This document shows positions 4,826 to 60,359 of a stretch of DNA of 64,000 bases, in pieces; positions within the stretch are counted from its first letter, which is position 1, and every line of letters begins with the position of its first letter. The notes beneath the pieces were generated by a model that had not been told where the DNA came from, made no database searches, and saw only the letters and a list, made by a program, of their open reading frames with translations. The stretch comes from Octopus sinensis (Eukaryota), in NCBI RefSeq assembly GCF_006345805.1, contig NW_021832382.1, positions 186,001 through 250,000 on the forward strand, written 5' to 3'. The translations under genes were made by a program, and so were the position numbers.

Positions 4826-5590
4826 AGATAGCTAAGCTAATTAAAGGCCTCACGAGACACCCGGCCAGCCTCGCGAATGGCGAAGCCGTTCCCTCGGATC
4901 ACAGCAATCGACAGACGTTCCAGGAGCCAAGAATACTCTCTTGGATCGTGGCTAGTCCTTGAAATTCGTCGGCCGAGCGAGCGAAGGAAGCGGAGTGTCT
5001 TGGGGCCGAAAATCCCGGAGGACTCCACGGCAATTGGAGTAAAGAACAGCGAGTTGGAAAGATGGCCGTACTTGAGAATCTTTCGGTCCTCGGCCTGCCT
5101 CGAAGCGTGCATAGGATTGGCGGCGGACTGAGCGAGATTTCCAAGCGAGAACGTGTCCGAACAGGTAGAATCCCAAATAAGGGATTTCCCCTGCTCGTAT
5201 GGGAAGGTGGACAACCCGTCTGGGCGTTTGCCGTCCCCTCTATCCAGTCCAACAGGTTCAAGGATTGACGGGATGCCAGCTGAAGCGAGGGCTCTCTGTA
5301 TGATCGAGTTGAGTTCACTGTGACGGAGGGCGCGACCAGCACTTCGCCGGCATGCGAGGGGGTGCAAACCGTACTCGTCAACAGTTCCCCCGCAACGGCA
5401 TTTGTGCGACTGGCAGATTTTCAGCCCGACACGGAGGGAAATTGCCATTCTTAGGCATTCCTTGTCCACCAGGTTCCCGATGGAAGGGAGAGGGAGAGCC
5501 TTCAACCAGACACCGCTGCCTTCGCAGCGACCTGCACGGAGGCAAGCGACACGACTCTTGCAACCAGACTCTTGCATTTATGCGGCTCAG
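4826..5590 (-). mobile_element. CRE-clade LINE, 5'-truncated (subfamily A), intact C-terminal zinc-knuckle plus RLE ORF
   Basis: 246-aa ORF with CRCG...H.LAC knuckle, RH motif and KRPDG...WDSTCSD restriction-like endonuclease motifs. Confidence 0.85.
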
Positions 5591-6229: not shown

Positions 6230-7623
6230 TGTGATGATATTAAAATCTTGGACAATATATGCTAACGATTCTTCTTAACTGTTTTCTGTAAAAGGAATCC
6301 AGCGACAAAATTTTTTGGTAAATCCTCAGGTATTAATAAAATGAATGAATACAATTAAGTCTAAAGGTATTAATTGAAAATTAGTTTTTAGGCGGTTTTT
6401 TGAATTATTCTTTAATATCGTGTTAGGCTGCTCATTTTGCCGAAGAGTTACAACTTAATAACTTTAAAAATTCTAACGGATTTCTGGCAAAATTCAAAAA
6501 GAGACATGATTTTACAATGTTGCTCTTTTCGTTGAGAATTTAAAGAATTCTTTTGTCAAGAATTTAAAGAAATTTCTAAATATTTCAGATAATTTAGAAC
6601 AAGTTAGTATTATGTTTATGATAGATATGTAGCCTGGCGGATTGCCAAACTGTTTCCCCGGATAATGGCGATCGAGAACCGTTGCATTAGCCAGTCCGCC
6701 TCCCGAGGATCATGGGTGCGCATTGAGATTTTGGCTCCGAGCTTGCGAAGAAACTTTTCAGTTTTTGAACTGAGAGCACCCGACGTCTCCGCCGCGATCG
6801 GCATCACGGAAAACTCCTCCGAGAGGGCAGAATATTTTGATAGCTTTAAATCTTCAGCTTTCTTAGCTGCAGATTTAGCCTCCAGAGCACACGAAGTTAA
6901 GTGAGAAGCAGAAAAGGTGTCCCAGCAGGTTGCATCCCATACGAGGCCTTTTCCGCCTTCAAAGGGGAAAAGGGTCATCCCGTCAGGACGTTTCCCGTCG
7001 CCGCGGTCAAGACCCGGTGGTTTGAGGACCGAAGGAATTCCCGCCAAGTCGAGGGCCCTCCGTATGATGTCATTCATAGCAGAGTGCCTCGGGAAACGTC
7101 CGGCACTCCTCCTGCACGATAAAGGGTGCAGACCGAAAGGGTCAACAGTGCAGCCACAGCGGCACGTGTGCGGGACACATTGTCTTAGTCCGAGGCTCAG
7201 AGAGACTCCGATCCTTACCGCTTCATCGTCAAGAAGAGTGGAGATTTCTAAATTGTATAAGCCTGAACAAATTTATAATCTGGATGAAACTGCATTATAC
7301 TAAAAGCTTATTCTACCAAAAAACATATGCAAAAACCGACTCCAAGGATATCAAAATTTTAAAGACCATGCGTCTATTATGCTTTGTTCAAATATTACCA
7401 GAAGTAATTACTACAACGAATGGATATTAGAATTATAAAAACATTCAAAACATTCATGATAAGAAAGCTACAATATTTAACTGATTTGCTCGGAAAAATT
7501 TGTTCGAAACTGAAAATGTTTTTGTATACAATTCTTTCCAGAAAGTTAATTTGGATTGGGGTCACGTATCTACTGAAACCATTCAAAATTGTTTAAAGAT
7601 TTTAGATGAATCTAATCACAAAA
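6230..7623 (+). mobile_element. Degenerate Tigger/pogo element interrupted by a CRE copy and followed by a Helitron
   Basis: NFKNSNGFLAKFKKRH-like segment before 6580; PEQIYNLDETALY and ETIQNC after 7245. Confidence 0.65.
6582..7243 (-). mobile_element. CRE-clade LINE (subfamily C), 5'-truncated, with 10-bp TSD
   Basis: GKRPDG...WDATCWD ORF 6616-7077; direct repeat ATTTCTAAAT at 6572-6581 and 7244-7253. Confidence 0.85.
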
Positions 7624-10754: not shown

Positions 10755-11637
10755 ATGGTGAGGGAACTTAGACAACAGCTGAACAAGGTCAGGACTGCTG
10801 TAGACTCAACTACGGGTAATAGAATTATGCATTCTAGGTTAATTGTTTGGGATGAATGTACGATGGCTCATAAAGGCGCATTCAAGCAGTTGACCGAACA
10901 TATAGAGATATCAAGAATTGTAGCGACCATTTGTTTGGGGGAGCATTAGTTGTATTGGCAGGTGATTTTAGACAGACGCTGCCAATTATTCAAAGAGGGA
11001 CGCCTGCGGATGAATTGAATGCCTGCCTCAAATCGTCATATTTGTGGACACACGTGAAAAAGGTAAGCTTAGATGTAAATGTACATGCACATTTACAAGG
11101 CGTTAATAGCATATTCCCACAAATCCTTCTAGATATTGGAAATGGGGCAATCACTTCAGAAATGCACGACCAGAAAATTAGGCTACCGGAAGAATTATGT
11201 ATTTTCGTAGAAACAGCAGAAGAATTATTGAATGCCGTCTATTCCGAACTATCTGAACACTACGTGAATTTCGACTGGCTGCGTGAACGAGCTATATTAG
11301 CTCCACTTAATGATGAGGTACTTAATATAAATTTAGATTATTAATGAAAATCCCTGGCAGAGAAAGAATATATAAATCGGTCGACGTTATTATGGACCAT
11401 GAAAGGGCCTGCGATAGATTTAAGAGACTACAATTTCCGCTGAAGATAAGTTTTGCTATGACAATAAACAAGGCCCAGGGACAGTCTTTAAAGGTAGTAG
11501 GCTTATTTTTAGAGAACGAGTGCTTTTCACATGGCCAGCTGTATGTGGGGTGCTCAAGGGTAGGTAGAAGAGAAATTTATTTATATTTGCCAAGGATGGA
11601 CGGACTGCAAACATCGTTTAAACAGGCCTTAGAATAG
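10755..11637 (+). pseudogene. Helitron Pif1-family helicase remnant
   Basis: IVWDECTM, FGGALVVLAGDFRQTLP, RAILAP and [22 protein letters not shown] motifs; frameshifts and an internal deletion. Confidence 0.9.
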
Positions 11638-13138: not shown

Positions 13139-14230
13139 CACCCCTCGACATTAAAATCCGAATACTTAATTTTTAGCAAATTTCTAATCATTTTTAATAA
13201 AATAATTTATTTGCGCTTCTTTATTTGTATTATTTTAACTATTTATATATTTAAATATATATTCGAACATATAATTTTCAAAATTAAAGCAGAAACGTGT
13301 TTTCTAGTGACAAAGAATTCCGAACGGTATTTTGTTCAACTCGCAGAATACAATTTTTATTAGACAAAAATGAATAATTTCAAAAAAGGACAAATTATAT
13401 CTTTATATAATAAAAATTTCTCCTATAAAATGATTTCGGACATCGTAAATATACCGAAGACAACTGTTTGGGACTTTGTTAAAAAATATCTAAAAACCGG
13501 GATTACGTCCAGAAAGGCTGGATCTGGAAGGCCACCCAAGTTCAGTCAAGATGAAATTAGGATTCTTTTATCATTATCAACTAATAATTTTCGAACCGCA
13601 GCTACCTTGTCTTCAGAAATGGAAAAAATTACACAAAAAAAGTCTCAGCACGCACAATAACAAGAATTCTAAACTCAAAAGGTTTGTATGGACGAGTTGT
13701 AAAGAAACGACCATTTCTAAGTTCAAAAAATATTGCTCTCAGATATGGAATATCTAAAAAATTTATTGCAATTTCCGACAGCGGATGGAGGAAAGTTATT
13801 TTCTCCGACGAATGTAGTTTTGAACTTTTTTCCCATTCAAGACGAATGTATCAATACAGAAAAAAAGGAAATAAATTGAGATATGCGAAGATAATACCTA
13901 GTTTTAAGTTTGGTGGAGGGAAAGTTCTTGTTTGGGGCTGTTTTTCGTATTTCGGAATGGGGAAATTAGTTTTTATTGATGGAAAAATGAACTCTGGGGA
14001 ATATATTAATATTCTGGCAAATAATCTTGAAGATTCAGCGAATAAAATGGGATTGAGCGACTATATATTCCAACAAGATAATGCGCCTTGCCACACATCT
14101 AAGGCAACTAAAGAATATATGTCGTCTCAAAATATTAATTTGCTCGACTGGCCACCTCAGTCACCTGACATGAACCCAATCGAACACATTTGGGCTCACA
14201 TTAAAAACGTTCTTTCAAATGATACGTCAG
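13139..14230 (+). mobile_element. Tc1/mariner transposase, 3'-truncated
   Basis: HTH ORF 13370-13660; FSDE...QQDNAPCH...WPPQSPDMNPIEHIW (DD34E); probable TA|CAC left end at 13137-13141; right TIR not found. Confidence 0.85.
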
Positions 14231-15034
14231 AAAGCAGAACAAGTACAAGATGCGCGGGAATTGCCAGTCGATCCGCTGCGCATTTTAACCCTTTTCACTT
14301 TCTCTATTAGTATAAATAATATTAATTAAAAAAAAGTAAAAAATTGATCTAAAGCAAAAAATATCGGAAATTTGGGGAAATATCCCAACGGAATTCATCA
14401 GAAAACTTGTTAGCTCAATGAAAAATCGTAATTTAGAAGTTTATAACAGAAAAGGAAGGCATTCAAGCTACTAATTAAATTTTGTTCGGTTTTTTTGTCA
14501 TGAAATTATCGTTTTTTGCTTTATTCTTTAAAATTATATGTTTCAATAAATATTTAAATATTAAAATAGTTATAATAATACAAATAAAGAAGCTCAAATA
14601 AATTATTTTATTGAAAATGATTAAAAATTTGCTTAAAATTAAGTGTTCGAATTTTAATGTCGAGGAATGTATGTAGATTCATATATACATTGTGTGTTAT
14701 ATTTTTGAATTTGTCTTGAGGAATTAATTCGTAAAAATTAATAATGGACGCATTTTTGAACAATGCCGCCAGTTCGATATCATGTTGTAAATTAATGAGT
14801 TCTAGTTGAAACTTTGCAGGCGCATCCTTAATTTCCACGCTGAATGGAGTTGCAAATATTTTCATTAAAGGAAGGAATTCTTTAAAATTCTAAAAATTAA
14901 ATTTATATAAATGTACCCCAAAACGTGCTTCAAATTGATTAATGAAATCACCAATTATGGATATGTTTAACCTTAAGAATGAATAATTAAATTTAAACAT
15001 TATTAAAAAATTAAAAAAGTTAGTTACTCTAGAG

Positions 15035-20922: not shown

Positions 20923-21552
20923 ATGTGGATATCTCTTTTGCGTCATTCAACCCTCTCCAGACACGTGCGACTATTAAATGGGCAACGTGACTACCTCGGA
21001 ATAAGACATTTCTGTACTCCCAACGAGCCGACTGACCCTCTGGAACAAATAAAGGAAGAAAATAGCAAACTGAAGGAATCACTGGAGGAACTGAAGGTTG
21101 GTCACCCCCTCCAATGGCAGGACAAGTACATCCGCTCTCTCGCAGAACAGGAAAACATGCGAAAACGACTTGTCAAACAAATCGAAGAGTCCAAAATATT
21201 TGCCATACAAAAATTTTCTCATGACCTCCTGGAAGTGACCGACGTCCTCCAAAAGGCCCTCCTTTCTGTCCCACAGTCCTCCCTGCCCGACAACCTTCAC
21301 TTGAAGAACCTTTTTGAGGGACTAGAAATGTCCAGTGAACAATTCAAGCACATTCTTTCCCGCCATGGAGTGGTTTCCATGGATACTGCTGTTGGGGATA
21401 AGTTCGATCCCTCCCTCCACTTTGCCCAGTACCAGGTGCCTATTACTGAGGACCAGGAGGACGGGACTGTGGCTGAGGTGGCCAAGGTTGGCTATTTGCT
21501 CCACTCTCGCACTCTACGACCTGCCGTTGTTGGAGTGTTCAAAAATATTTGA
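20923..21552 (+). CDS. GRPEL1: Mitochondrial GrpE nucleotide-exchange factor
   Basis: N-terminal presequence-like segment, DKYIRSLAEQENMRKR, FDPSLH, GYLLHSRTLRPAVVGV; one in-frame 24-nt intron 21097-21120. Confidence 0.9.
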   Translation: MWISLLRHSTLSRHVRLLNGQRDYLGIRHFCTPNEPTDPLEQIKEENSKLKESLEELKVGHPLQWQDKYIRSLAEQENMRKRLVKQIEESKIFAIQKFSHDLLEVTDVLQKALLSVPQSSLPDNLHLKNLFEGLEMSSEQFKHILSRHGVVSMDTAVGDKFDPSLHFAQYQVPITEDQEDGTVAEVAKVGYLLHSRTLRPAVVGVFKNI

Positions 21553-25241: not shown

Positions 25242-25880
25242 TTATATATGATATTTTTTTAGTCTCTGACGTCTATTACAAAACCAAATTCTGACGACGT
25301 CCTCCTCAATGGACAGCAACTCGGCAATGTCGGTTAACGATCTGGGGGAAGGTCTTTGATCCTCGCGAAACCAATTTTCAAGAAATGTTTTTTCAGCACA
25401 GTCAAACGAAGTTCGCTTTTTTCGTTTTTTGATTTCCTCGAATGAGTATATTAAAGCGGTTTTCTGGTCTGACGATCTTAAGGACAGCAACCACTTTCTA
25501 AAAATGTTTATCAGTTTGTTTTGAGTTGAGAATGACAGTTGGTTTGACTCGAAACGGCACACAGTGGTCTGTGATATGGAGATCCCTTTTTCCTCCATCA
25601 ATTGACTGATATCCGACTGAGTGTAGCCAAGTTTGATTCGTTCTTGTTTAAAGTATTTTATGAATGGTTCGAAATTTGCACTTTTGAACATACACTCGGT
25701 TGATTTTAAGTTTTTTGTTGGTTTGTTTATAGTTTGGAATGGATTTTGATTATTGTGATCACACGGATTGTAAAAGTTTGGCCCTTTCCGTCTCTCAGGA
25801 CTCGTCATTTGGTAATTTGCGTGGTTCATTGCTGTAGACGGAATAATAAATTTATAATTTATTATTTTAACGAAAGGCAA
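25242..25880 (-). CDS. Divergent intronless POU-homeodomain transcription factor (class III-like)
   Basis: FKQERIKLGYTQSDI...SQTTVCRFES POU-specific domain and KRKKRTS...WFCNRRQ homeodomain; the true start may be the downstream MNHAN. Confidence 0.9.
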   Translation of the reverse strand: MPFVKIINYKFIIPSTAMNHANYQMTSPERRKGPNFYNPCDHNNQNPFQTINKPTKNLKSTECMFKSANFEPFIKYFKQERIKLGYTQSDISQLMEEKGISISQTTVCRFESNQLSFSTQNKLINIFRKWLLSLRSSDQKTALIYSFEEIKKRKKRTSFDCAEKTFLENWFREDQRPSPRSLTDIAELLSIEEDVVRIWFCNRRQRLKKYHI

Positions 25881-27235: not shown

Positions 27236-27348
27236 TTTGTAAATAGTGTCTTTTTTGGTGATTTAACTAATTGGTAATTTAACTACTATTGAACTAATCA
27301 TTGACACAAAGAAATAAACCAGAACAAGATATAAAAAATGATTAACTA

Positions 27349-28692
27349 TTATTGTAGTCGGTCTAGAAATATTATTGTGTGATAAACCATAGTTGTCGGG
27401 ATCAATCTTTTCGGGCAACTCATTGATAGTCACTTCAAACCGCTTCTGCACATCGTTGAGTACTCCATTATCAGTGCTGTTAGCCACAAAAGTCACAGCA
27501 ATCCCCTTTGTCCCAAATCGACCAGCTCTGGCCACTCTGTGGAGGAAACTGTCAGCATCATCAGGCATGTCGTAGTTAAAGACAACATTGACTCTCTCAA
27601 TGTCTATTCCTCTGCCAAATAAATCCGTGGCCACAAGTATTCTCTTCTCAAAGTCTTTAAAGAGTTGGTATCTCTTGAGTCTCTCTTCCTGTTGCATTCC
27701 TCGGTGGATACAAATCACTTCAAAATTCCCAGCAAACAGTAGCTCGGTGAGAGCAACACATCGATTAACAGAACTGACGAAAATGATGGTTTGGTTGACA
27801 CTCAGAGACTCCAACAGTTTGAACAGCATTTTGGTCTTGACTCGTTCTTCCAGCTTTACATAGTACTGCTGGAGTCCGTGAAGAGTCAGTTTGGACTCGT
27901 CGTCAATGTAAATCTCCAATGGCTATGGATTAGTTAGACACACTCACGTCTTGCATGAACTTGAGACACACAGGTCGGATTGATTTGGGGAGAGTAGCAC
28001 TGAACATAATCACTTGCTTGTCGTGGGGAGTCTTTCGGAATATGTCCTGGACGTCTGATCGCATGTCCGTCTTGCCCAAGACTTTGTCACATTCGTCCAC
28101 CACAAAGTGCTGACATTTTTTCAAATTGAGGTGTTTTTCCACCACCAACTGCAGAATCCTTCCAGGAGTGCCGACCACCACTTGCGGCTTTTTCTTCAAA
28201 TTTTTTATGTCCGACTGGATTGGAATCCCTCCGAAACACACGGCCACTCTCACATTCGGCAAATACTTGGAGAATCGCTGATATTCCTTGGATATTTGGA
28301 AGGCCAATTCCCGAGTGTGACACAACACAAGAGTGTTCACATCTGTGCACGAATTCTCCAATTGGTGCAGAGTGGACAGGACGTACACTGCTGTCTTCCC
28401 CATCCCAGACTTGGCCTGACACACAATATCCATTGACAGAATTGCTTGCGGGATGCACTGATGTTGAACTGGCGGATTAGCACATGCAAGTACCTTCCGA
28501 GGGGTGTTCAAATCCACATTCCTGGATTGTTCGTAGTAGTTCAGGTTTGAGTAGGAAATCACGGAATCCCGAGCTGTGAATGGCCACATGAGATCCTTGA
28601 GTCTTGAGGGAGTTATTCTCTGTCTTCGTGGGGACAGTCACTTCATTCTCTTCTTCGTAGTCCAACAAATAGCTGTCGTTGTCGAGGGACAT
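27349..28692 (-). CDS. DDX39B: DEAD-box (DECD) RNA helicase UAP56
   Basis: [27 protein letters not shown] and RVARAGRFG motifs; three 25-nt GT-AG introns restore the frame. Confidence 0.95.
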
Positions 28693-28937
28693 ATCTGAGA
28701 GAATGGATCAATAATGAGAATAGTCCATATATAATTATAATTTTGAGTTAACATCTTCACCAAAAGGAAGAAAGTACGGAATGAACAAATAACAGACCTT
28801 GCAAAAATAGGAAATGATTTAAAAAGAGGAAACTACTATTACATTTCTTGGTTAGCTGCTACAAAAAAATCGAAAATATTTTTATTTAAATTTAATAATA
28901 ATAATCTAAATATATTAAATTTTTCAATTATATATTT

Positions 28938-31900
28938 TGTCACATGGGTGATCAGACCCCTATGGGCAACCTGGCCTTTACGTGTTTCCATGGCAACTAC
29001 ATAGCAAATATTTACTAAAAGGCCAAATAATATAAAAACAAGCAATCCGAACTAATGATTGAACTTTAAATTTTTGAGGAAATGATGTTTTATATTTGAA
29101 CCATGCTTGCTTTAAAATAGTAAAATTATTTACAACATTAGCAAATTATAATGTGAATTATTTTTATTTTTGATAATATAAATTGCAACATTAGCAAATT
29201 ATAATTTACATCAAATTTTTTGCAAAGTTTGTAACAACTTTAACTCTAACCTTAACCCAAACCCTAACGTTGGCAAATGACAACATAAATATATTCAAAA
29301 TCTAACCCTAACCTTAACCCAAACCCTAACGTTGGCAAGTGACAACATAAATGTATTCAAAATCTAACCCTAACCCTAACGTTAGCAAGTGACAACATAA
29401 ATATTCAAATCTAACCCTAACGTTGGCAAGTGACAACATAAATATTCAAAATCTAACCCTAACCTTAACCCTAACGTTGGCAAGTGACAACATAAATATT
29501 CAAAATCTAACCCTAACCCTAACGTTGGCAAGTGACAACATAAATATTCAAAATCTAACCCTAACCCTAACGTTGGCAAGTGACAACATAAATATTCAAA
29601 TCTAACCCTAACGTTGGCAAGTGACAACATAAATATTCAAAATCTAACCCTAACCTTAACCCTAACGTTGGCAAGTGACAACATAAATATTCAAAATCTA
29701 ACCCTAACCTTAACCCAAACGTTGGCAAGTGACAACATAAATATTCAAAATCTAACCTAACCCTAACGTTGGCAAGTGACAACATAAATATTCAAAATCT
29801 AACCCTAACGTTAGCAAGTGACAACATAAATATTCAAATCTAACCCTAACCCTACACGTTGGCAAGTGACAACATAAATATTCAAAATCTAACCCTAACG
29901 TTAGCAAGTGACAACACATAAATATTCAAATCTAACCCTAACGTTGGCAGTGACAACATAAATATTCAAAATCTAACCCTAACCCAAACCCTAACGTTGG
30001 CAATGACAACATAAATATTCAAAATCTAACCTAACCCAACCCTAACGTTGGCAAATGACAACATAAATATTCAAAATCTAACCTAACCTTAACCCAAACC
30101 CTAACGTTGGCAAGTGACACACATAAATGTATTCAAAATCTAACCCAACCCTAACGTTTGCAAGTGACAACAATAAATTTCAAAATCTAACCCTAACGTT
30201 AGCAAGTGACAACATAAATATTCAAATCTAACAAAAAAACCTAACCTACGTTGGCAAGTGACAACATAAATATTCAAAATCTAACCCTAACGTTAGCAGT
30301 GACAACATAAATATTCAAATCTAACCCTAACGTTGGCAAGTGACAACATAAATATTCAAAATCTACCCTAAACCCAACCCTAACGTTGGCAAATGACAAC
30401 ATAAATATTCAAAATCTAACCCTAACCTTAACCCAAACCCTAACGTTGGCAAGTGACAACATAAATGTATTCAAAATCTAACCCTAACCCTAACGTTGGC
30501 AAGTGACAACATAAATATTCAAAATCTAACCCTAACGTTAGCAAGTGACAACATAAATATTCAATCTAACCCTAACCCTAACGTTGGCAAGTGACAACAA
30601 AATATTCAAAATCTAACCCTAACGTTAGCAAGTGACAACTAAATATTCAAATCTAACCCTAACGTTGGCAGTGACACATAAATCATTCAAAAAAACCCTA
30701 ACCCAAACCCTAACGTTGGCAAAGACAACATAAATATATTCAAAACTAACCGAAACCTTAACCCAACCCCTACTTGGCAGTGACAACATAAATTATTCCA
30801 AAATCTCCCTAACCCTAACGTTAGCAAGTGACAACATAAATGTATTCAAAATCTACCCTAACCCTAACGTTGGCAAGTGACAACATAAATATTCAAAATC
30901 TAATCAAAATCTAACCCAACCCTAACGTTAGCAAGTGACACATAAATATCAAATCTAACCCTAACGTTGGCAAGTGACAACATAAATATTCAAAATCTAA
31001 CCCTAACCCTAACGTTGGCAAGTGACAACATAAATATTCAAAATCTAACCCTAACGTTAGCAAGTGACAACATAAATATTCAAATCTAACCCTAACGTTG
31101 GCAAGTGACAACTAAATATTCAAAATCTAACCCTAACCCAAACCCTAACGTTGGCAAATGACAACATAATATATTCAAAATCTACCCTAACCTTAACCCA
31201 AACCCTAACGTTGGCAGTGACAACATATGTATTCAAAATCTAACCCTAACCCTAACGTTGGCAAGTGACAACATAAATATTCAAAATCTAACCCTAACGT
31301 TAGCAAGTGACAACATAAATATTCAAATCTAACCCTAACCCTACCGTTGGCAAGTGACAACATAAATATTCAAAATCTAACCCTAACGTTAGCAAGTGAC
31401 AACATAAATATTCAAATCTAACCCTAACGTTGGCAAGTGACAACATAAATATTCAAAATCTAACCCTAACCCAAACCCTAACGTTGGCAAATGACAACAT
31501 AAATATATTCAAAATCTAACCCTAACCTTAACCCAAACCCTAACGTTGGCAAGTGACAACATAAATGTATTCAAAATCTAACCCTAACCCTAACGTTGGC
31601 AAGTGACAACATAAATATTCAAAATCTAACCCTAACGTTAGCAAGTGACAACATAAATATTCAAATCTAACCCTAACCCTAACGTTGGCAAGTGACAACA
31701 TAAATATTCAAAATCTAACCCTAACGTTAGCAAGTGACAACATAAATATTCAAATCTAACCCTAACGTTGGCAAGTGACAACATAAATATTCAAAATCTA
31801 ACCCTAACCCAAACCCTAACGTTGGCAAATGACAACATAAATATATTCAAAATCTAACCCTAACCTTAACCCAAACCCTAACGTTGGCAAGTGACAACAT

Positions 31901-32402
31901 AAATGTATTCAAAATCTAACCCTAACCCTAACGTTGGCAAGTGACAACATAAATATTCAAAATCTAACCCTAACCTTAACCCAAGCCCTAACGTAACCCT
32001 AACTCGAAATTAAATGATGTTTCTGCTGACGATTCTTCAGACATTTTTGACAAAAATTGGAAGCCTTTTTGGCCAACCGGTGTTTGCTTCGAGCATTCAT
32101 ATCCTCCGGGAATATCCCGATTAACGCTTCTTTAATTTGATTGTATTCGTTAATATTTCTGACGTAACCCTTAAACCCAGACATCACAAAGTGTGAGTAA
32201 CCACGCTGTTAAAATTAATATACTTTTGGGTAAGCCATTTTTAAAAGATAATTCAAATGTAATTTTAAATTAGAATAATTGATTAATCTACACTCTTCCA
32301 TATATAAATTGCTATATTCAATATTTAATACCTTTTCTGCGGTTTCCATAGAAACACGTGAAAGGACTGGCTGCCCATAGCGACATAGTCGCCCATGTGA
32401 CA
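28938..32402 (-). mobile_element. Ginger-like (integrase-type) DNA transposon derivative carrying a TAACCC minisatellite
   Basis: About 60-bp imperfect TIRs starting TGTCACATGGG (about 48/61 identical by hand); 5-bp TSD TATTT; residual ORF 31999-32187 YNQIKEALIGIFPEDMNARSKHRLAKKASNF-CQKC resembles an integrase N-terminus and CxxC. Confidence 0.65.
29241..32003. repeat. Telomere-like minisatellite: 1-4 TAACCC-type hexamers plus a 36-bp core, about 55-57 units, with a 338-bp 7-unit higher-order repeat
   Basis: Core TAACGTTGGCAAGTGACAACATAAATATTCAAAATC; HOR starts at about 31128, 31461 and 31799. Confidence 0.95.
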
Positions 32403-32499
32403 TATTTAAACTAACAAATTATATTTCTCACAGTTTACAGTTTCCTTACAGACCTTAATTTGTTCCTCTTTTTAGGAACTTTCTGTTTTAAGATCAATA

Positions 32500-35400
32500 C
32501 CTAAAGCTCGCTGTGAATTAATTATGAAGGTTCGACTCTGACTGGGCTCTCTACACTCTTAACAATACACTGTCGAATTCTCCAATGAACTAGGTATCCT
32601 TGTTTTTTCCCAGACTGTTTGTTCTCACATCATCTGTCAATCATCAACCACTTTGAATCAGCGCTAGATCAACAGTCCCTGAAGTCCAACAGAGAATGCA
32701 AAGCTGAGAACTCAGTTTGGTATATTAGGAATGCATGCGTTTCCATCTCATGTCTGTCACTAATGCCTGGTAGGGATTACAACCCAATTTGAGTGCACGG
32801 AGCAGCAGCCATGGGCAAGACAGACAACCTCCCAGGTGTTGGGCAGGTTTTCAAGAATGCTAGTGGCTCAAGTTACCTACGAGGAATTGACGGTTGAGCC
32901 CAGACAACCTAGTAAGTGGAAGGACAACATCGCTGCAAAGATTTCTTTGCGTGAGGTAGAGCTGGAAGCACTGATTGGGCACATTGTGGGAAACGGGGTC
33001 AAAGGCAAGACTCCCCCCTTGGTGCGTACTTCACCGACACAGGGCCGCTAAGTGGGACCTGAATGAAGTCGTTAGGGCAAAGAATGAGGTAGAAGAGTCT
33101 ATTCTTGTTTACAAGAAGAAACTCTCTACCTATGAATCGAGGTGTAAACATAATCGAGAGAACAACCTGTTTGAGTTTAATCGCAGGATGTTTTATCGTT
33201 GTTTACACGATGATGGGGTGAAGGAGGGTAGCCAACAAGACTCGGAGATGTTAGCCACATGGGGGAGTATGTGGAAAGTCCGACCTCGCAAGGGAAAAGT
33301 GGACTTTAGCCTAGAGTCCACCAGACCCTTGATGGCCGAGTCTTGCGGTGTCTTTGACATTCGCAAGAAGTTCGATGAGGCAGTTTCCTGCCTTCCAGAT
33401 TGGAAAACTACTGGGATTGATAAAGTATTTAATTTCTTTATAAAACGCTGTACCTCATTGCACGATTGTATGTTTAATATAATCGAGAAGTGTATAGCGT
33501 CCCCGGATAGTATCCCAAGCTGGTTGTGCACTGGTGTTACTTATTTGATACCAAAAGTGTCCTGTCCAGCGTCTCCGACAGATTATCGCCCGATAACCTG
33601 CATGCCTACCTTATACAAGCTGATGACCAAGTTGGTGGCTAATGAGGTCAGAGGATTTGTTGAGGTTAATGGCATTCTATCCGAGAATCAGCTCGGAACT
33701 GTGAGGAATTGCCAGGGAGCAAAGAAGCAGGCATTGATCAACAAGTGTCTTTCTAACGCTTATGGAAACTCACTTACAGTGGTCGTCAAAAAAAATTGCT
33801 CACCAATGTTTATGTCTTTATATAGCATTATTCTGATTTATTTTTTTTGTAAACATCTTTAAGTAGTATTTTATTATTATACCTTAATTTTTATAATAAA
33901 ATTTTTCTTTTTGATTTACAAACTTAAACAAAACAAAAAATTGCAAGACAAAAAACATTAGCACAAATTTGGAAATCTCATTATCAGTAATTAATATGTC
34001 CTCCCCTTGCTAAATATAAAGAATAACTCCTTTTTCTCATTGAATTTACTAAGTTTTGTAAAAAACTTTTAGGAATTGACTGCCAAATTTTCATAATATT
34101 TGTCTTTAGATCCTTTTTACTTTTCGGGGGATTTTTAGCTAATTCTCTTTTCATAAAGCACCATACATGCTCTATTGGGTTAAGATCCGGTGATTGCGAT
34201 GGCCAATCAAGAATATATATTTTTTGGTCTCGAAATATGCCTTAACCATACGAGATGTATGGCATGAAGCATTATCCTGTTGAAAAATAAACGAGGATAA
34301 GCCCATTTTTTCAGCTGATTGGTCCAGATTATTAGACAGTAAAGTTATATAATATCCAGAGTTCATAGTTTCTACGATAAAAACCAAATTGCCTACACCA
34401 CTATACGATATACAGCCCTAATCATAACTCTCCCTAATCCGAACTTAACAGTCGGCAGCAAATGTGCATTTTTTAACTCCGTTTTATTTTTTCTGTAACA
34501 AGCTGATGTTTTCTTTTGTTAAAAACATCGAACATTGACTCATCTGAGAATATCACCGATTTCCATGTACTATCAGATATCGATAAAAATCGTAGTGACG
34601 CAGACCATCTCGAATGATATTTTTTGAGAAAGCAATGGCTTTCTTTTTGCTACACGACAATATACCCCATTTTTATTCAAAGTTCTCAGAATTGTCCTAG
34701 GGGAAACATCAATATTGAAAGTTTCTTTAGTTTTGTTGGACAAATCCACTGCCAACAATGTAGGATGTGATTCGGTTTCATTACATAAAAATTGTATTTG
34801 GGGGGAATTTAGTTTCGGAAGACGTCCTGAGCCCGGTCTCCGATGCAGTGTTCCAAATTCTCGAAATTTTCGAATATTAAATGAAATTGTGGAATTCGGC
34901 AAATTAAGTATTTTTGAGATTTCTCTGATTGATTTACCCTCTTTAAAGTACGCAATAATCATCCCTTTTTTAAATTCAGTTAACTGTTTCTTGGGAGAAC
35001 GTGGCATATGCAATAACAAAAAAAGTGAGCAATGTTTTTTGTCACGAGATTTAAATTTTTATGCTTTAAATTCCTTATATTGAAATAAAATCGCATTAAT
35101 AAATTATTATATTTAAGAATTAGAATAAAAAATGAAGCGTAAGATTAAATTTTTTATTAATTTGTCAATAAAAGCATGAAAAAATGGCTGAGCAATTTTT
35201 TTTGACGAGCACTGTATGTCTATGTGGGTGGATGTTAAGAAGGCATTTGACTCCGTTGATCATGCATATCTCATCGAATGTCTACACAAGCTGTGTCTGC
35301 CTGTGTGGTTCATTAGTTTTGTTAAAGCTGTGATGAGTATGTGAAGTGTTCATCTCGAGTATAACAAACACACAATCGGTGAGGTAAAACTGGAGAGGGG

Positions 35401-37160
35401 GATTTTACAAGGAAATAGCATGTCGCCGCTACTCTTTGTGCTCTGTCTCGAACCATTGAGTAGGCTCCTCAATGGAAGACACGAACAATTGTCAATAACT
35501 CATGAGGGACGTTTGTTTAACACGAACCACCTTGTGCTTATTGACGACATTAAATTGTTCGATCGGTCCTCAAACCAACTCCGCTCTATGGGAGAATGTG
35601 TGAACGAATTCCTGGGGAAAATAGGATTGGAACTTAATTTTTCCAAGTCGGCGACTAACTTGCAATTATATGGCGATCTAGTCAAGGTCTTGGAAGATCA
35701 CGAGGGATATAAGTACCTCGGGATCACTGAAAGCCCCAAATCGCTCATACTCCCAGAAACCAAGATCCAAATAATAGAGGGAGTTCGGAAGCGGGCAGCA
35801 ATGTTATGCAAAACTCATTTAAATGCAAGGAATTTATTCCATGCGTTGAATGAATATGCAATATCATTGCTTAACTATTATGTAGGTATTGTGGAGTTTG
35901 AGCCACAGGAGTACGATGATATGGATTGTATGATCCGTAGAGTACTGAGGGAAAACCATGTTTATGTGCTGGCAGCCAACAAGGAGAGGCTATATCTACC
36001 ACGTGCTCAATTCGGAAGGGGGCTTTGTGGAGTGGCCCATTTAAGTGAGCGTATTCTCCTGAAGATGCATGACCACCTGGTGTCTGGTGCTAGTGTATCA
36101 GATAGGATGTACGCAATCTTGCAAACGGAAAAGGCACGAGCTAGTCACCTTGGAACCATAAAGGCCTATTTGTTGGCTAAGTACGGTTTCGAGAGTGAAC
36201 GAGTGGTAGATGTGAAGGGGTTGATCAAAGTACAAAAAGAGTCTTTGATTAAAAAGATCAACTTAAAAGTCCTTCACAAGACCCTCTTCCAAGCTTTGGA
36301 CAATCCGCATGTTGACGTTAAGTCGTCAACGACTTGGCTAAGATATGGAAATAATTCCCCTCGATCCGAAGAATTATTTACCTATCTGCAAGATCGAAAC
36401 TTTTTCTGGAATCGATTTAAGGTCTGTCCTCATTGTAAATTGAGGTGCCTGTCCGTAGACCACATAGCCACGAAATGCGGTCGTATGCTTTACCACGACT
36501 ATACGTGGAGGCATAACGAGGTTGTACGTAGTTTACACTTAATGCTGTGCAATAAGTATGGGATTAGACGTTCCAGAAAGTTGCGAACTCATAAGGTGCA
36601 GTCTGTGGTCGAGAATGCTAGAGTATGCATTAAAGTGAATACTAGTATTCACACCTCGATACTTGTCCAGCACAATAAGCCGGACATTGTGGTACAAGAT
36701 AAGGTCTCTGGCGAGATACCTATCATAGAAGTTGGCATCACATGTCTAGATCGTTTGACCACGGTGGAAGTGGAAAAGAAGCGTAAGTACGACCTTCTTG
36801 CAAACGAGCTTGGGTTGATGCACGGATGCAAGGTCTTTGTCATTCCTTGCGTGATGACATGGGAAGGAATTGTATCTAAGTACCACAAGGGTTATCTCAG
36901 GCAGTTGGGAGTCGATAGGTACATTCAGGCCTATATGCAGTCCACTGTCCTGAAAAGAACTCTAGAGAGTGCATCTGTTGATGCGCGCAGATCCAGCCCC
37001 CTAATGCCACATGGGCAGAATTATCGGCTGGAAAATGCTCTCACAGAGCTATTCCTTCGACCAGAAGCAGAGGAGGCTGGTCTCCAGACTTCAGATGCGG
37101 ACGGGTCGTCGGATTAATATTTCATTATTTCGATCAAGAAAAGCTTTAACAATTCAATCA
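32500..37160 (+). mobile_element. R2/NeSL-like RLE non-LTR retrotransposon, near full length, disrupted
   Basis: DYRPITC, QLG, DVKKAFDS, GILQG, LIDD-type active site, CPHC..H...C knuckle, RHNEV and KPD..EV..KKRKY RLE motifs. Frameshift near 33000, TGA at 35342 and a Tc1 insertion. The 5' end is approximate. Confidence 0.9.
33777..35214 (-). mobile_element. Tc1 element inserted in the RLE LINE RT domain
   Basis: 26-bp TIR CAGTG(G/C)TCGTCAAAAAAAATTGCTCA; TA TSD; HTH ORF 34573-35019 and QQDNASCH remnant. Confidence 0.93.
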
Positions 37161-47037: not shown

Positions 47038-48401
47038 TTACAGTTCGACGCTGTTCGGCAATTCAGAAATAGAAATACCATAGTGAGTCTGAATGTCACT
47101 CAACATTCTTTTATCACTCTCACACACAAAATTAATAGCAGTCCCCTTTCTCCCATACCGTCCACTTCTCCCAATCCTTAACAAATACACACAATCCATT
47201 ACCTGTGTAAATATGATTGTCTGTCGTTGGGGACATCATAGTTAATGACCAAATTCACGTGCTGCAAATCTAACCCACGCGACAACAAATCACTCGAAAT
47301 TAGAATGCGACAGTTCTCAGACCGGAACTCCCCAATGACACGATCTCTCTCTGCCTGGTCCAATTGCCCGTGCTAGCATAACCACAAATCATCACCATAG
47401 ACTCCACCGGGTATTTCTGAGATCTCATCAACTCGGACAAACATTTGACAGTGTTGATACTATTACAAAATATGACAGCTTTGGATATAGACACGTTGTT
47501 GTATATCATCTTAAGGACATCAATCTTACTCTCCTAACCATCAAACTCACATAAACCACCTGATTAGCAACATTGACATAATATTGCGTAATCCCCGAGA
47601 GAGTCAACTCTGTCCGACTCACCAAAATACGGAAAGGATTTATCAAAAACTTGTCCGACAATTCCAAAACCTCATTCGGCAAAGTCGCAGAAACAAGGAC
47701 AAGCTGACCACTTTTTGGCATATTGTCGATCAGCGCACACATTGTCTCCCGAAACCCCTTCGAAAGCATCTCATCGGCCTCATCAAGGACAATCATGAGC
47801 AGATGATCCAAGCGAAGGACATGTTCAATAATCAAATGGAGAACCCTCCCAGGAGTCCCCACCACAATGTCCACTCCATCACGGACATCGGTCACGTTGT
47901 CCCTCACATTCCGACCTCCCACCAGAGCTCTGACGGATAACTAAAAATGTGTAAGTTGATGGACCTGGCAGTGTTTTGACAAGTCTACGAGAACGTTGTA
48001 GGACTGGGTGGCCAACTCTCTGGTTGGAGACAAGACAATTGCTCGACATTTGTGAACAGGGTTCTCTTGATACGCACAAAACACTCGCTGTACTGCAGCA
48101 ATTGAAAAAGTAGCAGTTTTTCCTGTTCCCGACTGTGCTTGGATCACACAGTCTCTTCCGTTATAGCATGGGACTATTGCACGTTGCTGAATTTGGGAGG
48201 GGCGCTCAAATCCTGATGAAAATATTCCTCGAAGAATTTCCATCTTGAGACCCATGTCTTGGAAATTCTCGTATATTGTGATGTCTTTACTGGTTGTAAA
48301 GATAAGTTCGGTTTCTGCATTTTCAAATTCATTGGTCTGAATATTAATTATTATTAAATATTGATTTTTTAAAATTTTTATTATGTAACAACCTGAGACA
48401 T
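47038..48401 (-). CDS. EIF4A3: eIF4A-family DEAD-box helicase, most like eIF4AIII
   Basis: [27 protein letters not shown] (eIF4AIII-type motif VI); introns of 56, 24, 26, 23 and 26 nt. Confidence 0.75.
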
Positions 48402-48689
48402 AACAAAACAACTAATGTAATAAAAACGTGAAGTATTTTATTGCTTAAATTATATTAATTAAATATATATAATCATTTAAGTTTATATATAAGTAAATCC
48501 TAATAATTTTAAAAATCCTTCTAATATATTTTTTGAGGAGAGACCAGCTGCCATGGAGAAAAGTAGCTATATATAGAGTATTGGTGGGCCAGTGCAGCAG
48601 TTTTTCCGTAAGGTAACGGTTGGGAGTCTTCGCTTTTGGGGAAACATATGGCTTTTTTGAGGTGGTTATACAACTATGTATAATCAATC

Positions 48690-56502: not shown

Positions 56503-58797
56503 CAGTCTAACCTCTTTTTGGGGCACCTAGTGCCCCAAAAACAGGGGTTTCCCCAGATAGAGGGGTTTTCTGATATTAACGAAAAAAACCAACGTTTTGT
56601 TAATTTAAAACCAAAAGATGTTTATTTTTAATTTCATTTAACAATTTTAGTCTGAATAACTCTCCCCGATCAGAAGGGTTGTTCTCATATTTGCAGGATA
56701 GAAACTTTTTTAATGGTCAACGGAAACAGTGTAACCACTGTAAGAGTAAGGCAATGACCGTTGACCATTTAGCCACGAAGTGCGGGAGTATGCTTTACCA
56801 TGATTACACGTGGAGGCATAACGAGGTGGTGAGGTCCCTCCATCTTTTGCTCTGCAATAAGTATGGCTTGAGGCGGTCCAGAAAGTTGCGAACATATCGA
56901 GTTCAATCGGTGTGTGAGAACTCGCGGGTGTGCATTAAGGTGGATACCCCCATACGCACTTCGATTGTTGTCCAGCACAACAGACCCGACATTGTGGTCC
57001 ACGATAAGGTCACCGGGGAGATTGTTATCGTGGAGGTGGGCATCACGTGCCTAGACCGTTTGCAGATAGTGGAAGTGGAGAAAAAAAGGAAGTATGACCT
57101 CCTTGCAAACGAGCTAGGACTGATGCACCAGTGCAAAGTCCATGTCATCCCGTGTGTGATGACATGGGATGGACTGGTCACCAAATACCACAAGCGGTAC
57201 TTAAGACAGTTGGATGTAGATAAGTCTCTACAGGCTTATATACAGTCAACTGTTCTTAAGAGGACTCTGGAGAGTGTCTCGTTTGATGCTCGCCGATCCA
57301 GCCCTTTCCTGACGTTTAGTCAGCAAGAGGCGCTGGACTGCACCTTCTCGAAGGTCTACAGTGCCAGAGAAGAGGAGGAAGAAGGGGAGGAGGTGCGTGG
57401 AGTGCCGCCTTCTGCTCACTTCGAAGGCTCTGGACTTAGTTAGTAAAATTACTTAGTTAATTAGTTTCTTTCTTAATAAACAATTTTAGTCTTTACTTGT
57501 CGTCAAATGATCCGTTATTTTCGCTCCGAATTTGTACTTTTGAATTAATCGATCCATTGTCAACTTCTTAAAATTATAAAATTCATTTAATATGGAAAAT
57601 GCCATCTTCCATTGCATTAATTGAAAAAATTAGTTCCTTGATAGATTGACATTTTATAACTCCGTCATATAATGCATTGTCATTTTCTATACCAGAGATT
57701 TCTACTGATATAACTTCCTTGACAGTTTCTTCGATTTTTCTCCATTTATTTGATCAGATTTTTTCACATCATGTGTACGTTGCTCATTAATTTTATTCCA
57801 ACAATTTGTATTCGTTTCTTTAGTAACATTCATCCAAGCATCTTCAATTGCTAGCAAAACATTTCTCATATTTATATTTGATAGGCCTAAAAGATTTATT
57901 TATATACAGTGAATACCATTTAATATTAATTCTTTGCATTCAAAAAAACATATGAATTTAACCAGTTCATGTGAGTAACATGTTTTGAATGAGCGAATTA
58001 TTCCCATGTCAAGCGGTTGAAGCAGCGGAGTAGTATTTTTAGGCAAATATAAAAAAATTATATTGTAATAATCATCTGCTTTATGGCATCCTGCATTATC
58101 CAAAATTAATAAAATATGTCTGTTATTCTCTTTCATTCGTTCATTTATCACATATAACCATGGATTAAAAATATAACTTGTCATCCAAGCATTTTTTGAA
58201 GACATTTAATACATTATGCTGTTCAATATTAAAATTTTTCAAACAACGAGGAGACTTGTATTTTCCGATTACCAAAGGTTTCATTTTCTCACCAATTGAA
58301 TTTGTACATAAAAGAACGGTAACTCTTTCTTTATTTTTTTTGACACCACTACAAGTGTCCGTTAACTCTACGAAGGATCTACAGTCGGATTTTTTGACAA
58401 ATAATCCAGTCTCATCGCAGTTGAAGATATCCTTGCTGGAATATGCTTCCATGTGATTATCATAAGTTTTAAAGAAGCTTTTCAGCATGGATGTGTCGCA
58501 TGACTTTTTTTCACCAGAAATTGTTTTTAAAAAAAGTTGATGCCGTTTCTTAAAACGAACAAGCCATCCATTGGAAGCTTTAAATTCTGGTAAATTTAAA
58601 ATTTGAGCTGCTTTCTTGGCAGTAGATTGTAATAATGGTCCGGAAACTACTAAATTATCATTTCTTAATCTATAAATGCCCCATAACGGGGTTTATCTTA
58701 TAAAGAATAAACAGAAAAACTTCTAATAGAAATTCAAATTGCCCCAAAACCCGAGGGTGCCCCACGTCCGGGGTCGCCCCAATAAGGGGTTGCACTG
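56503..58797 (-). mobile_element. Tigger/pogo element interrupted by an RLE LINE
   Basis: TA-flanked imperfect TIRs CAGTCTAACCTCTTTTTGGGGC / CAGTGCAACCCCTTATTGGGGC; FNCDETGL, ILDNAGCH and QPLDMGII motifs. Confidence 0.8.
56654..57478 (+). mobile_element. R2/NeSL-like RLE LINE, 5'-truncated, with 14-bp TSD
   Basis: Intact knuckle plus RLE ORF similar to 36360-37000; TSD AACAATTTTAGTCT at 56640-56653 and 57479-57492. Confidence 0.9.
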
Positions 58798-60359
58798 TAG
58801 TAGGATCACAATGCGTACTACTTCATATATAATTATACCTTTTCAGTATCATAATTTCTGCCTTTTTAATTTTGACAAACTCCTGCCTATTTGTAAGCTT
58901 GTACATCTTAAATATTTTTGAAGTAGTTTAGGAAATGCTGTTTAAAACGTGATAGTGGAATTTTATTCAGTTCAAAAACATTTTTACACAAACTTCCCCT
59001 GAAGTATATCTAGTTGAAAAAAATTAGAGTTCTGTATAAAAACGAGAACTATAAAAGTCCAGAAAGTCTTTTGCGCATTTAACACAGGCTGAAACATCGA
59101 CTATTGGTCATAGCTAGGGCAACCGCAAATATGACCTAAAAAATTTCAAATATGACCGATAAAATATGACTTATATGACCTTAAAAGAAAAAATATATGC
59201 CCTTAATATGACCTAATAAATTTTTATTTTATGTATTAATAAAGTTTTAATAAGACTTATATTTCGAACTAATCACTCAAATTTATTGCAATATAACGAA
59301 AAGTAATATTTAATGTTATCATTTTTAAAGTTTCTATCCTTCTCCAACATCTTTTGAAGTATAGAAAAACTTCTTTCAATGGAAATAGTTGTTGCTGGAC
59401 ATTTCCATAATATCGAACAAATTTCTGGTGAACAATTATCAATCTTAGCAGTATAAATTTCTTTTAATCGATTTTTATCTATTCTTTTATGGAAATATTT
59501 AGATATTCCCCATAGATCATCCCCAAAATTTATCACATTAATAAATTTAACGGCATCCTCAATGGTAAAAAAAGTTTCTTGGCATTGATGTAATCCATCT
59601 AATATGTCACTATAACGTGATTTTATCAATGCAAGGTTTCTTTCCAAATTAATTGAATTTAAAGCAGTTTTTACTTTATCTAAGATTTTCCCTTTTTTGT
59701 TAAATTCAGTACCAGAAACTATAGTGCGAACTGTATGCATTTTTTTAGTAAAAGGCAGCACTAAGCCAGGTTCCCCATCTTGTAATTATTACTTCAGGTG
59801 GTAATTTTATATTGTCAAAAGGATCTCTTCGAGATTTTTTTTGAGCAATGCAGTTTTCATCGTGGCAATCAGATTATTAATATCCCCATAGTGTGTACTA
59901 ATTTTTAAGGCACAATTATGTAAAAGATGAGCAAAACAAGTGATGTGTATAACATTGTTATACATAATTGACAATGTTTCTGGAGCAAATATCATGTATG
60001 ATGCAGCGTCGATAACCATAAACAAAATTAAATCGTTTGACGTTAAAATCCTTTAAAGTTTCATCGATTATCTGGAAAATAACTGAAGCATTACATATTT
60101 CAACAGAAATGCATTTTAATAGATAAATTTTCGATGGATTACAAATAGTCTCCCCAAAACATTCACAATTTATTATTTGAAATTTGGGTTTCATCAACAA
60201 TCAAAAATATTTTCAAATTTAAAATAAGATTTTTTATTCGTTCAAAATTTAGAAGATATTTATCATACACCAATTTGCGGAACACAACAGAACTTGCAAT
60301 TAAGTCCCCCATTAGTACTTCTCGTAAATTCGTACGGATATTTATTTAATATTTTAGAG

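What the first reader, a model, noticed from the sequence alone, without database searches (positions are those of the whole stretch)
28938..32402. Ginger-like DNA transposon that carries a telomere-repeat array as cargo
Seen: the 2.76-kb TAACCC-rich array is not free-standing. It sits between about 60-bp imperfect inverted repeats beginning TGTCACATGGG, flanked by a 5-bp direct repeat (TATTT at 28933-28937 and 32403-32407), with a short integrase-like ORF remnant inside. Known: Ginger/TDD elements have TGT...ACA TIRs, 4-5-bp TSDs and Gypsy-like integrases. Inference: a cut-and-paste vehicle that disperses interstitial telomere-like seeds. It could act as a telomere-protein mimic or as a breakage or telomere-healing site, which would matter if the host undergoes DNA elimination.
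Basis: partly seen in the sequence, partly recalled or inferred. Interest (0 to 1): 0.85.

Follow-up and report, generated by a model that had tools for sequence, protein, structure and literature searches.

The report
Octopus transposon carrying telomere-like minisatellite
This is one 3.5-kb copy of a non-coding cut-and-paste transposon in an octopus genome, and its interior is a tandem minisatellite in which each unit holds a short telomere-like motif; transposons with an internal satellite are already known, and this copy has neither a true telomere array nor an integrase remnant.

Summary
The window is Octopus sinensis contig VCDQ01002019.1.

**Confirmed**
- The element spans 28938-32402. 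Its terminal inverted repeats are 60/61 nt, 79% identical, and both start TGTCACATGGG. Their alignment scores 57, against a shuffle maximum of 39.
- An exact 5-bp duplication, TATTT, flanks the element. No other length from 2 to 10 bp matches.

**Corrected**
- The 2,765-bp interior is not a telomere-repeat array. It holds about 57 monomers of 38-61 bp. Each is a 31-nt non-telomeric core plus 10-28 nt of TAACCC-like hexamers.
- Only about 30% of the array's bases are telomere-like, and the longest perfect telomeric run is 17 nt.
- The monomers form a 7-monomer, 338-bp higher-order repeat.

**Not supported**
- The "integrase-like ORF remnant" has no Pfam match and no hit among 1.84 billion representative proteins.

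**Interpretation**
- This is a non-autonomous TIR transposon with an internal minisatellite, a kind already described in frogs, bivalves and Drosophila.
- The TGTNR termini, TIR length, 5-bp duplication and AT-rich target fit Ginger2/TDD. A Ginger2 family is annotated in the sister species O. vulgaris.
- Membership stays untested, because no tool here could search octopus DNA for other copies or an autonomous partner.
- The proposed telomere-mimic or chromosome-healing roles have no support.

The parts
28933..28937 (.). Left target-site duplication, TATTT
   Evidence: Read directly. It is the only matching flank length among 2-10 bp, p about 0.0024.
28938..28997 (+). Left terminal inverted repeat, starting TGTCACATGGG (TGTNR-type terminus)
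   Evidence: Inverted alignment score 57 against a shuffle maximum of 39.
28998..29240 (.). Left unique internal part. It is AT-rich (the left non-array part, 28938-29240, is 27% GC) and non-coding, with a 32-nt direct repeat at 29121-29152 and 29174-29205 (87.5% identical).
   Evidence: (stops in all frames).
29241..32005 (+). Composite minisatellite of about 57 monomers, 38-61 bp each. A monomer is the core TTGGCAAGTGACAACATAAATATTCAAAATC plus 1.7 to 4.7 TAACCC-like hexamers, with the C-rich strand on +.
29945..31999 (+). The part of the array organised as about 6 copies of a 7-monomer higher-order repeat (55+61+50+42+47+42+41 = 338 bp). TRF scores the last 3.3 copies at 96% matches. In the aligned copies that lack large rearrangements, 0-2 substitutions stand against 5-10 single-base deletions.
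   Evidence: period 338, 3.3 copies, 96%; monomer lengths; substitution and indel counts.
32006..32341 (.). Right unique internal part. No homologue was found.
32342..32402 (-). Right terminal inverted repeat, ending CCCATGTGACA
32403..32407 (.). Right target-site duplication, TATTT

Best explanation
This is a single copy (3,465 bp) of a non-autonomous cut-and-paste DNA transposon. It is inserted into AT-rich intergenic DNA of Octopus sinensis, about 350 bp upstream of a DEAD-box helicase retrocopy.

Shown: the insertion duplicated five target bases (TATTT). About 60-nt imperfect inverted repeats bound the element. It has no coding capacity.

Inferred: it can move only if a transposase made elsewhere recognises its termini. 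The terminus TGTCA (TGTNR), the TIR length, the 5-bp duplication and the AT-rich target are those of integrase-type transposons. The best fit is Ginger2/TDD, so the most likely mobilising enzyme is a Ginger2-type DDE integrase-like transposase.

Eighty percent of the interior is a minisatellite whose monomer joins a 31-nt unique core to a short, variable telomere-like tract. Inferred: the array grew by replication slippage, which explains the variable hexamer number, and by unequal exchange, which explains the 7-monomer higher-order repeat. It is most likely selfish or neutral DNA with no telomere function.
For: - Host identity comes (contig VCDQ01002019.1 of GCA_006345805.1; a cluster member is named Octopus sinensis).
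- There is no coding capacity and no homologue.
- No rve/integrase domain occurs in the 30 ORFs of at least 110 aa that were scanned, out of 41 in the window. The other 11 were judged by eye and mostly overlap scanned ones.
- Ginger features from the literature are TGTNR termini, 50-180-bp TIRs and AT-rich targets for metazoan Ginger2, and 5-bp TSDs for TDD-4/5 (PMC2836005). Kojima gives '4 or 5 bp for Ginger2' (PMC10045372).
- One Ginger2 family (526 kb) and one Ginger1 family (825 kb) are annotated in the sister species O. vulgaris (PMC13282606 supplement).
- TIR elements with internal tandem arrays are an established class (PMC9659126; PMC12628747).
Against: - Only one copy was seen. There is no second copy of the TIR or the monomer in the 64-kb window, and no octopus genome could be searched, so mobility of a family is inferred from one TIR plus TSD.
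- Metazoan Ginger2 elements described so far make 4-bp TSDs, not 5-bp. The TSD here is not centred on an RTATAY site.
- The TIRs are 21% divergent.
- No autonomous partner was found.
- Whether the array was present when the element transposed, or expanded afterwards at this locus, is unknown.
Confidence: 0.7

Rival explanations
1. The transposon is real, but the array is not cargo. A short internal repeat expanded at this locus after insertion, so the family does not spread telomere-like arrays.
For: The higher-order repeat copies are almost free of substitutions, 0-2 per 338 bp, which points to very recent amplification. The TIRs, by contrast, are 21% divergent. No second array occurs in the window. 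In-situ growth of internal arrays is a documented route (PMC12628747).
Against: The monomer core shows no significant similarity to the element's unique parts, so no proto-monomer is visible. Imperfect TIRs may be a family trait and need not indicate age. Tandem-repeat-bearing MITE families with arrays in many copies are known.
Confidence: 0.4
2. The element belongs to a DNA-transposon superfamily other than Ginger2/TDD. Candidates are Transib or a hAT group with 5-bp duplications, Tc1/mariner with a TA target, or an undescribed family.
For: Superfamily cannot be assigned from one non-coding copy. The O. vulgaris annotation has 123 unclassified TIR families covering 12.4 Mb, against one Ginger2 family. 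Transib also makes 5-bp duplications (own knowledge). The sequence CACATGG sits three bases inside the terminus.
Against: If the terminus were CAC..GTG, the flanks TTTGT and ACATA would not match. A TA duplication would need three extra bases on the left end only. hAT termini are typically YARNG, not TGTCA (own knowledge). TGTNR with a 60-nt TIR and a 5-bp duplication is the published Ginger/TDD signature.
Confidence: 0.3
3. There is no transposon. An ordinary interstitial minisatellite happens to lie between sequences that form an inverted repeat by chance.
For: Only one locus was seen. The flanks are AT-rich, which makes short direct repeats more likely by chance.
Against: The inverted-repeat score of 57 exceeded all 1000 shuffles (maximum 39) and all 128 real window pairs (maximum 33). 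The direct repeat abuts the repeat ends exactly and matches only at 5 bp, p about 0.0024.
Confidence: 0.05
4. The array works as a telomere-protein decoy, a fragile site or a seed for new telomere addition.
For: The G-rich strand carries 64 YTAGGGTTR half-sites, and two perfect TTAGGG repeats occur together 12 times. The only experimentally determined cephalopod telomere motif is TTAGGG (PMC13218726).
Against: No run has three perfect repeats and the longest perfect tract is 17 nt. There is no canonical G-quadruplex motif, and 70% of the array is non-telomeric core. The locus is internal to a 295-kb contig with genes on both sides. From my own knowledge, programmed DNA elimination is not reported in octopuses. 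No data on protein binding or breakage were available.
Confidence: 0.03
5. The structure is an assembly artefact.
For: The middle of the array differs from the cleaner higher-order repeat copies mainly by single-base deletions, 5-10 per copy against 0-2 substitutions. That is the signature of unpolished long-read consensus, so monomer number and array length may be wrong.
Against: The two ends carry matching TIRs and the same 5-bp duplication. A chimeric join of two loci would not produce that.
Confidence: 0.05

Closest known systems
Ginger2/TDD DNA transposons (Bao, Kapitonov and Jurka 2010, PMC2836005)
   Same: TGTNR terminus (TGTCA). TIR length inside the published 50-180 bp range. A 5-bp duplication, as in TDD-4/5 and within '4 or 5 bp for Ginger2' (PMC10045372). 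An AT-rich target. The superfamily is present in molluscs, and one family is annotated in O. vulgaris.
   Different: There is no integrase-like coding sequence or remnant in this copy. Published metazoan Ginger2 families make 4-bp duplications at RTATAY. No autonomous partner with these termini was found. No Ginger element with an internal minisatellite turned up in the papers read.
Tandem-repeat-containing MITEs and TIR elements: Xmix/Xstir and miDNA4 in Xenopus, pearl/CvA and Donax MITEs in bivalves, Tetris in Drosophila virilis (PMC9659126, PMC12628747, PMC4079207)
   Same: A short non-coding element with TIRs and a TSD, whose centre is an array of satellite-like monomers that varies by unequal exchange. 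Such elements are well documented in molluscs.
   Different: Here the monomer contains a telomere-like tract. At 3.5 kb with a 2.8-kb array, this copy is larger than a typical MITE. Copy number and array variation across the genome are unknown.
Interstitial telomeric sequences and subtelomeric composite repeats
   Same: TTAGGG-type hexamers lie at an internal chromosomal site, with degenerate variants (TAACCT, AAACCC).
   Different: The hexamers never form a continuous tract. They are 10-28-nt islands separated by a 31-nt unrelated core, and the whole array sits inside transposon termini.
Helentron/Helitron non-autonomous elements carrying satellite arrays (CgHINE in Crassostrea gigas)
   Same: They are a mobile element in a mollusc that carries and spreads central tandem repeats.
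   Different: Helitrons have no TIRs and make no target duplication. This element has both, and the array borders lack Helitron-type ends.

Membership tests
Ginger2/TDD | Encodes a Gypsy-integrase-like transposase (H2C2 zinc finger plus DDE), or keeps a remnant of one | tested here: not met
   The candidate ORF 31999-32208 (minus strand) has no Pfam hit, no word-sharing candidate among 5.8 billion proteins and 0 hits among 1.84 billion representatives. Its H/C spacing does not fit HHCC. All frames of both unique parts contain stops.
Ginger2/TDD | For a non-autonomous copy: shares its termini with an autonomous element that encodes the integrase-like transposase | not testable with these tools
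   No tool searches octopus genomic DNA. The metagenome and viral scans returned nothing and do not cover the host. No rve domain occurs in the 30 window ORFs scanned.
Ginger2/TDD | Termini 5'-TGTNR...YNACA-3' | tested here: met
   TGTCA...TGACA. The definition is from PMC2836005.
Ginger2/TDD | TIRs of about 50-180 bp | tested here: met
   60/61 nt at 78.7% identity, with weaker similarity out to about 80 nt.
Ginger2/TDD | Target-site duplication of 4 bp (metazoan families) or 5 bp (TDD-4/5) | tested here: inconclusive
   An exact 5-bp TATTT in one copy. The length fits TDD and the '4 or 5 bp' rule, but not the 4 bp of the described metazoan families. One copy cannot establish the family's length.
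Ginger2/TDD | Preference for the AT-rich target RTATAY | tested here: inconclusive
   The reconstructed empty site is ...CAATTATATATTTAAACTAAC.... It is AT-rich and contains ATATAT, which overlaps the duplication but is not centred on it.
Tandem-repeat-containing non-autonomous TIR elements (TR-MITE type) | TIRs plus a TSD, no coding capacity, and a central array of tandem monomers | tested here: met
Tandem-repeat-containing non-autonomous TIR elements (TR-MITE type) | Many dispersed copies with the same ends and variable monomer number | not testable with these tools
   There is one copy in the window. The host genome is not searchable here.
Telomeric repeat array or interstitial telomeric sequence | A continuous tract of the telomere hexamer (TTAGGG)n | tested here: not met
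   The longest perfect tract is 17 nt. No run has three perfect repeats. Only 30% of the array's bases lie in hexamer-like blocks.
Transib | Termini CACNNTG directly abutting a 5-bp duplication | tested here: not met
   CACATGG begins three bases inside the terminus. With that boundary the flanks would be TTTGT and ACATA, which do not match.

The most novel reading that the evidence does not exclude
The termini define a multi-copy octopus family, possibly Ginger2-mobilised, in which most members carry this core-plus-TTAGGG minisatellite. A cut-and-paste transposon would then be the vehicle that seeds telomere-like arrays across cephalopod chromosomes. Those arrays could recruit telomere-binding proteins or mark fragile or rearrangement-prone sites.
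Probability: 0.12. Interest if true: 0.55.

Novelty: new member of a known kind. Interest (0 to 1): 0.27.

Why it matters
The locus adds a cephalopod example to the known link between DNA transposons and satellite DNA. If the superfamily assignment holds, it would also be a Ginger-type element with an internal minisatellite, which none of the papers I read describes.

If many copies carry the array, the family would explain part of the interstitial telomere-like signal in octopus genomes. It would also be a convenient marker for transposon-driven satellite birth.

For annotation, the practical point is that this should be labelled a composite minisatellite inside a TIR element. It is not an interstitial telomere. 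The array sequence in this assembly also looks poorly polished.

Tried and rejected
**Homology of the candidate ORF.** Pfam, the 5.8-billion-protein word search and a full phmmer search against 1.84 billion representatives all found nothing.

**Finding other arrays through called ORFs.** A homology search with an 82-aa array ORF gave only a weak, unrelated hit. An exact look-up of the ORF spanning the right TIR found no record.

**Finding the orthologous (empty) site in other octopuses.**
- Clusters of the neighbouring DEAD-box, POU, RT and GrpE proteins contain only O. sinensis sequences.
- A homology search with the POU protein returned relatives at no more than 42% identity.

**DNA pattern scans for the monomer core and the TIR.** Metagenome contigs and viral contigs gave 0 hits. 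These collections do not hold octopus DNA, so the result says nothing about copy number.

**Sampling more octopus DNA through transposon proteins from the window.** The look-ups returned only the same contig or no record.

**Literature string search for the TIR and core sequences.** Only chance primer matches came back.

**Other checks.**
- Deriving the monomer from the element's own unique sequence gave no similarity above the shuffle null.
- An Rfam scan of the window found no family.
- Helitron-type array borders, Transib boundaries and Tc1/mariner TA boundaries were rejected by reading the junctions.

Structure prediction of the 69-aa peptide was not attempted. A single-sequence model of a peptide with no homologues would not be informative.

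Full report
**Source of the window.** An exact look-up of the GrpE ORF (20923-21552) places the window on contig VCDQ01002019.1 of assembly GCA_006345805.1 (294,666 bp). Window position 1 is contig position 186,001. A cluster member of a reverse-transcriptase ORF in the window is named Octopus sinensis by NCBI. The surroundings are ordinary octopus euchromatin. They hold a CLC channel, GrpE, DDRGK, a POU-homeobox gene, DEAD-box helicase copies and many transposon fragments.

**The transposon-like frame is real.**
- Both ends start with TGTCACATGGG.
- A gapped alignment of the left end against the reverse complement of the right end runs 60/61 nt at 78.7% identity with one indel. Weaker similarity extends to about 80 nt.
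- The inverted local alignment scores 57. The null is 24 +/- 2.7 with a maximum of 39 over 1000 dinucleotide-preserving shuffles. The maximum is 33 over 128 real pairs of window segments at the same spacing.
- Immediately outside the repeats the five bases TATTT occur on both sides. Among flank lengths of 2-10 bp only 5 matches, and local composition gives p of about 0.0024.
- The matching duplication argues against a chimeric assembly of two loci.
- The reconstructed empty site is ...CAATTATATATTTAAACTAAC....

**The interior is not a telomere-repeat array.**
- Splitting the 2,765-bp array (29241-32005) at its conserved core gives about 57 monomers of 38-61 bp.
- Each monomer is a 31-nt core, TTGGCAAGTGACAACATAAATATTCAAAATC, followed by a telomere-like block.
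- The blocks are TAACCCTAAC (19 monomers), TAACCCTAACCCTAAC (10 monomers) or longer blocks with the variants TAACCT and AAACCC (about 12 monomers).
- Only about 30% of the array's bases are in hexamer-like blocks. The longest perfect telomeric stretch is 17 nt.
- Two perfect repeats occur together 12 times and three never do. No canonical G-quadruplex motif is present.
- From about 29945 onward the array is built from a seven-monomer higher-order repeat (55+61+50+42+47+42+41 = 338 bp) in about six copies.
- Copies differ from the cleanest copy by 0-2 substitutions but 5-10 single-base deletions. I read this as unpolished long-read consensus in the array's middle. The real copies are probably almost identical and the array length is uncertain.
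- The monomer and two-repeat telomeric strings occur nowhere else in the window.

**The 'integrase-like ORF remnant' is not supported.**
- The only candidate is a 62-69-codon open frame on the minus strand (31999-32208) that ends at the array border.
- It has no Pfam family at E up to 10 except a noise hit. No candidate shares words with it among 5.8 billion proteins. It has no hit at E <= 0.001 among 1.84 billion representative proteins searched with full phmmer.
- Its histidines and cysteines are not spaced as in the integrase HHCC finger.
- Two other chance ORFs of the same size lie in the 700 bp of unique element sequence, so its length is unremarkable.
- None of the 30 window ORFs scanned (of 41 with at least 110 aa) has an rve/integrase domain.

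**What it is.** The anatomy is that of a non-autonomous TIR transposon: TIRs, a TSD, no coding capacity, and an interior taken over by a tandem array. This class is well described. Examples are Xmix/Xstir and miDNA4 in Xenopus, pearl/CvA and Donax MITEs in bivalves, and Tetris in Drosophila. Helentron-borne arrays in oysters are a mechanistically different parallel (PMC9659126; PMC12628747).

I infer growth by slippage within the hexamer tract and unequal exchange between monomers and higher-order units. The monomer core shows no similarity above chance to the element's unique parts. Its origin therefore stays open: either a captured pre-existing repeat or a proto-monomer that has since been lost.

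**Superfamily.**
- Bao et al. define Ginger termini as TGTNR. They report Ginger1 with 4-bp CCGG/CCGT duplications, and metazoan Ginger2 with 50-180-bp TIRs, 4-bp duplications and AT-rich RTATAY targets. They report TDD-4/5 with 5-bp duplications.
- Kojima summarises '4 or 5 bp for Ginger2'. GingerRoot/IS3EU make 6-bp duplications and mostly have TA..TA ends.
- The present element has a TGTCA terminus, a 60-nt TIR, a 5-bp duplication and an AT-rich target. It fits Ginger2/TDD better than any other superfamily I know and does not fit Ginger1.
- Ginger2 has been found in a sea snail and Ginger elements in bivalves and other molluscs. One Ginger2 family (526 kb) and one Ginger1 family (825 kb) are annotated in O. 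vulgaris, next to 123 unclassified TIR families.
- Superfamily membership is defined by the transposase. That could not be tested, so I put Ginger2 membership at about 0.4.
- Transib boundaries, Tc1/mariner TA boundaries and Helitron ends fail on reading the junctions.

**What could not be done.** The decisive test is a census of the termini and the monomer in octopus genomes. No tool here searches eukaryotic genomic DNA. The protein-based routes to other octopus loci returned only this contig. Pattern scans of metagenomic and viral contigs found nothing, which is uninformative because those collections lack the host. Three questions therefore stay open: whether a family exists, whether its members carry the array, and which enzyme moves them.

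**Function.** Nothing supports a telomere-mimic, breakage or healing role. The locus is internal to a 295-kb contig with genes on both sides. The telomere-like tracts are very short and interrupted. From my own knowledge, the host is not known to eliminate DNA. The 64 YTAGGGTTR half-sites leave weak protein binding possible in principle. TTAGGG is the only experimentally determined cephalopod telomere motif.

**Verdict.** This is a real but ordinary structure: a new member of the known class of TIR transposons with an internal minisatellite. Its termini are Ginger2/TDD-like and its monomer has a telomere-like motif. Interest is modest unless a genome-wide census shows a family that spreads these arrays.

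Noticed in passing
window 33777-35214: A Tc1/mariner-type element with the TIR CAGTG[G/C]TCGTCAAAAAAAATTGCTCA, flanked by TA on both sides. It carries an HTH transposase fragment (ORF 34573-35019, minus strand). It is nested inside a reverse-transcriptase-bearing non-LTR element whose ORF is split into 32975-33862 and 35420-37117.
   Followed up: partly
window 27263-28589 (minus strand) and 47506-48411 (minus strand): Two intronless DEAD-box helicase copies, by eye DDX39/UAP56-like and eIF4A-like. Each is split into two adjacent ORFs. They are either processed pseudogenes or frames broken by single-base assembly errors. The first lies about 350 bp from the element's left end.
   Followed up: partly
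window 25242-25808 (minus strand): An intronless 188-aa POU plus homeodomain gene. Its nearest relatives in a 5.8-billion-protein collection are only about 41% identical.
   Followed up: partly
window 29945-31100: The middle of the array differs from the cleanest higher-order repeat copy mostly by single-base deletions and hardly at all by substitutions. This suggests unpolished long-read consensus in this public assembly.
   Followed up: partly
window 29121-29152 and 29174-29205: A 32-nt direct repeat (87.5% identical, 53 bp apart) in the element's left subterminal region. It could be a transposase-binding motif or an incipient duplication.
   Followed up: no
window 10931-11344; 13684-14310; 59273-59761; 61095-61475: Further transposon fragments are present: a PIF1-like (Helitron-type) helicase piece, two DDE_3 Tc1/mariner transposase pieces and a weak hAT dimerisation-domain piece.
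   Followed up: no
window 4837-5577, 6616-7077, 36300-37117 and 56679-57443: A recurrent conserved C-terminal module (e.g. ...GDGKRPDG...WD.TC.DTF...) follows reverse-transcriptase ORFs and has no Pfam match. It probably belongs to an octopus retroelement lineage.
   Followed up: no
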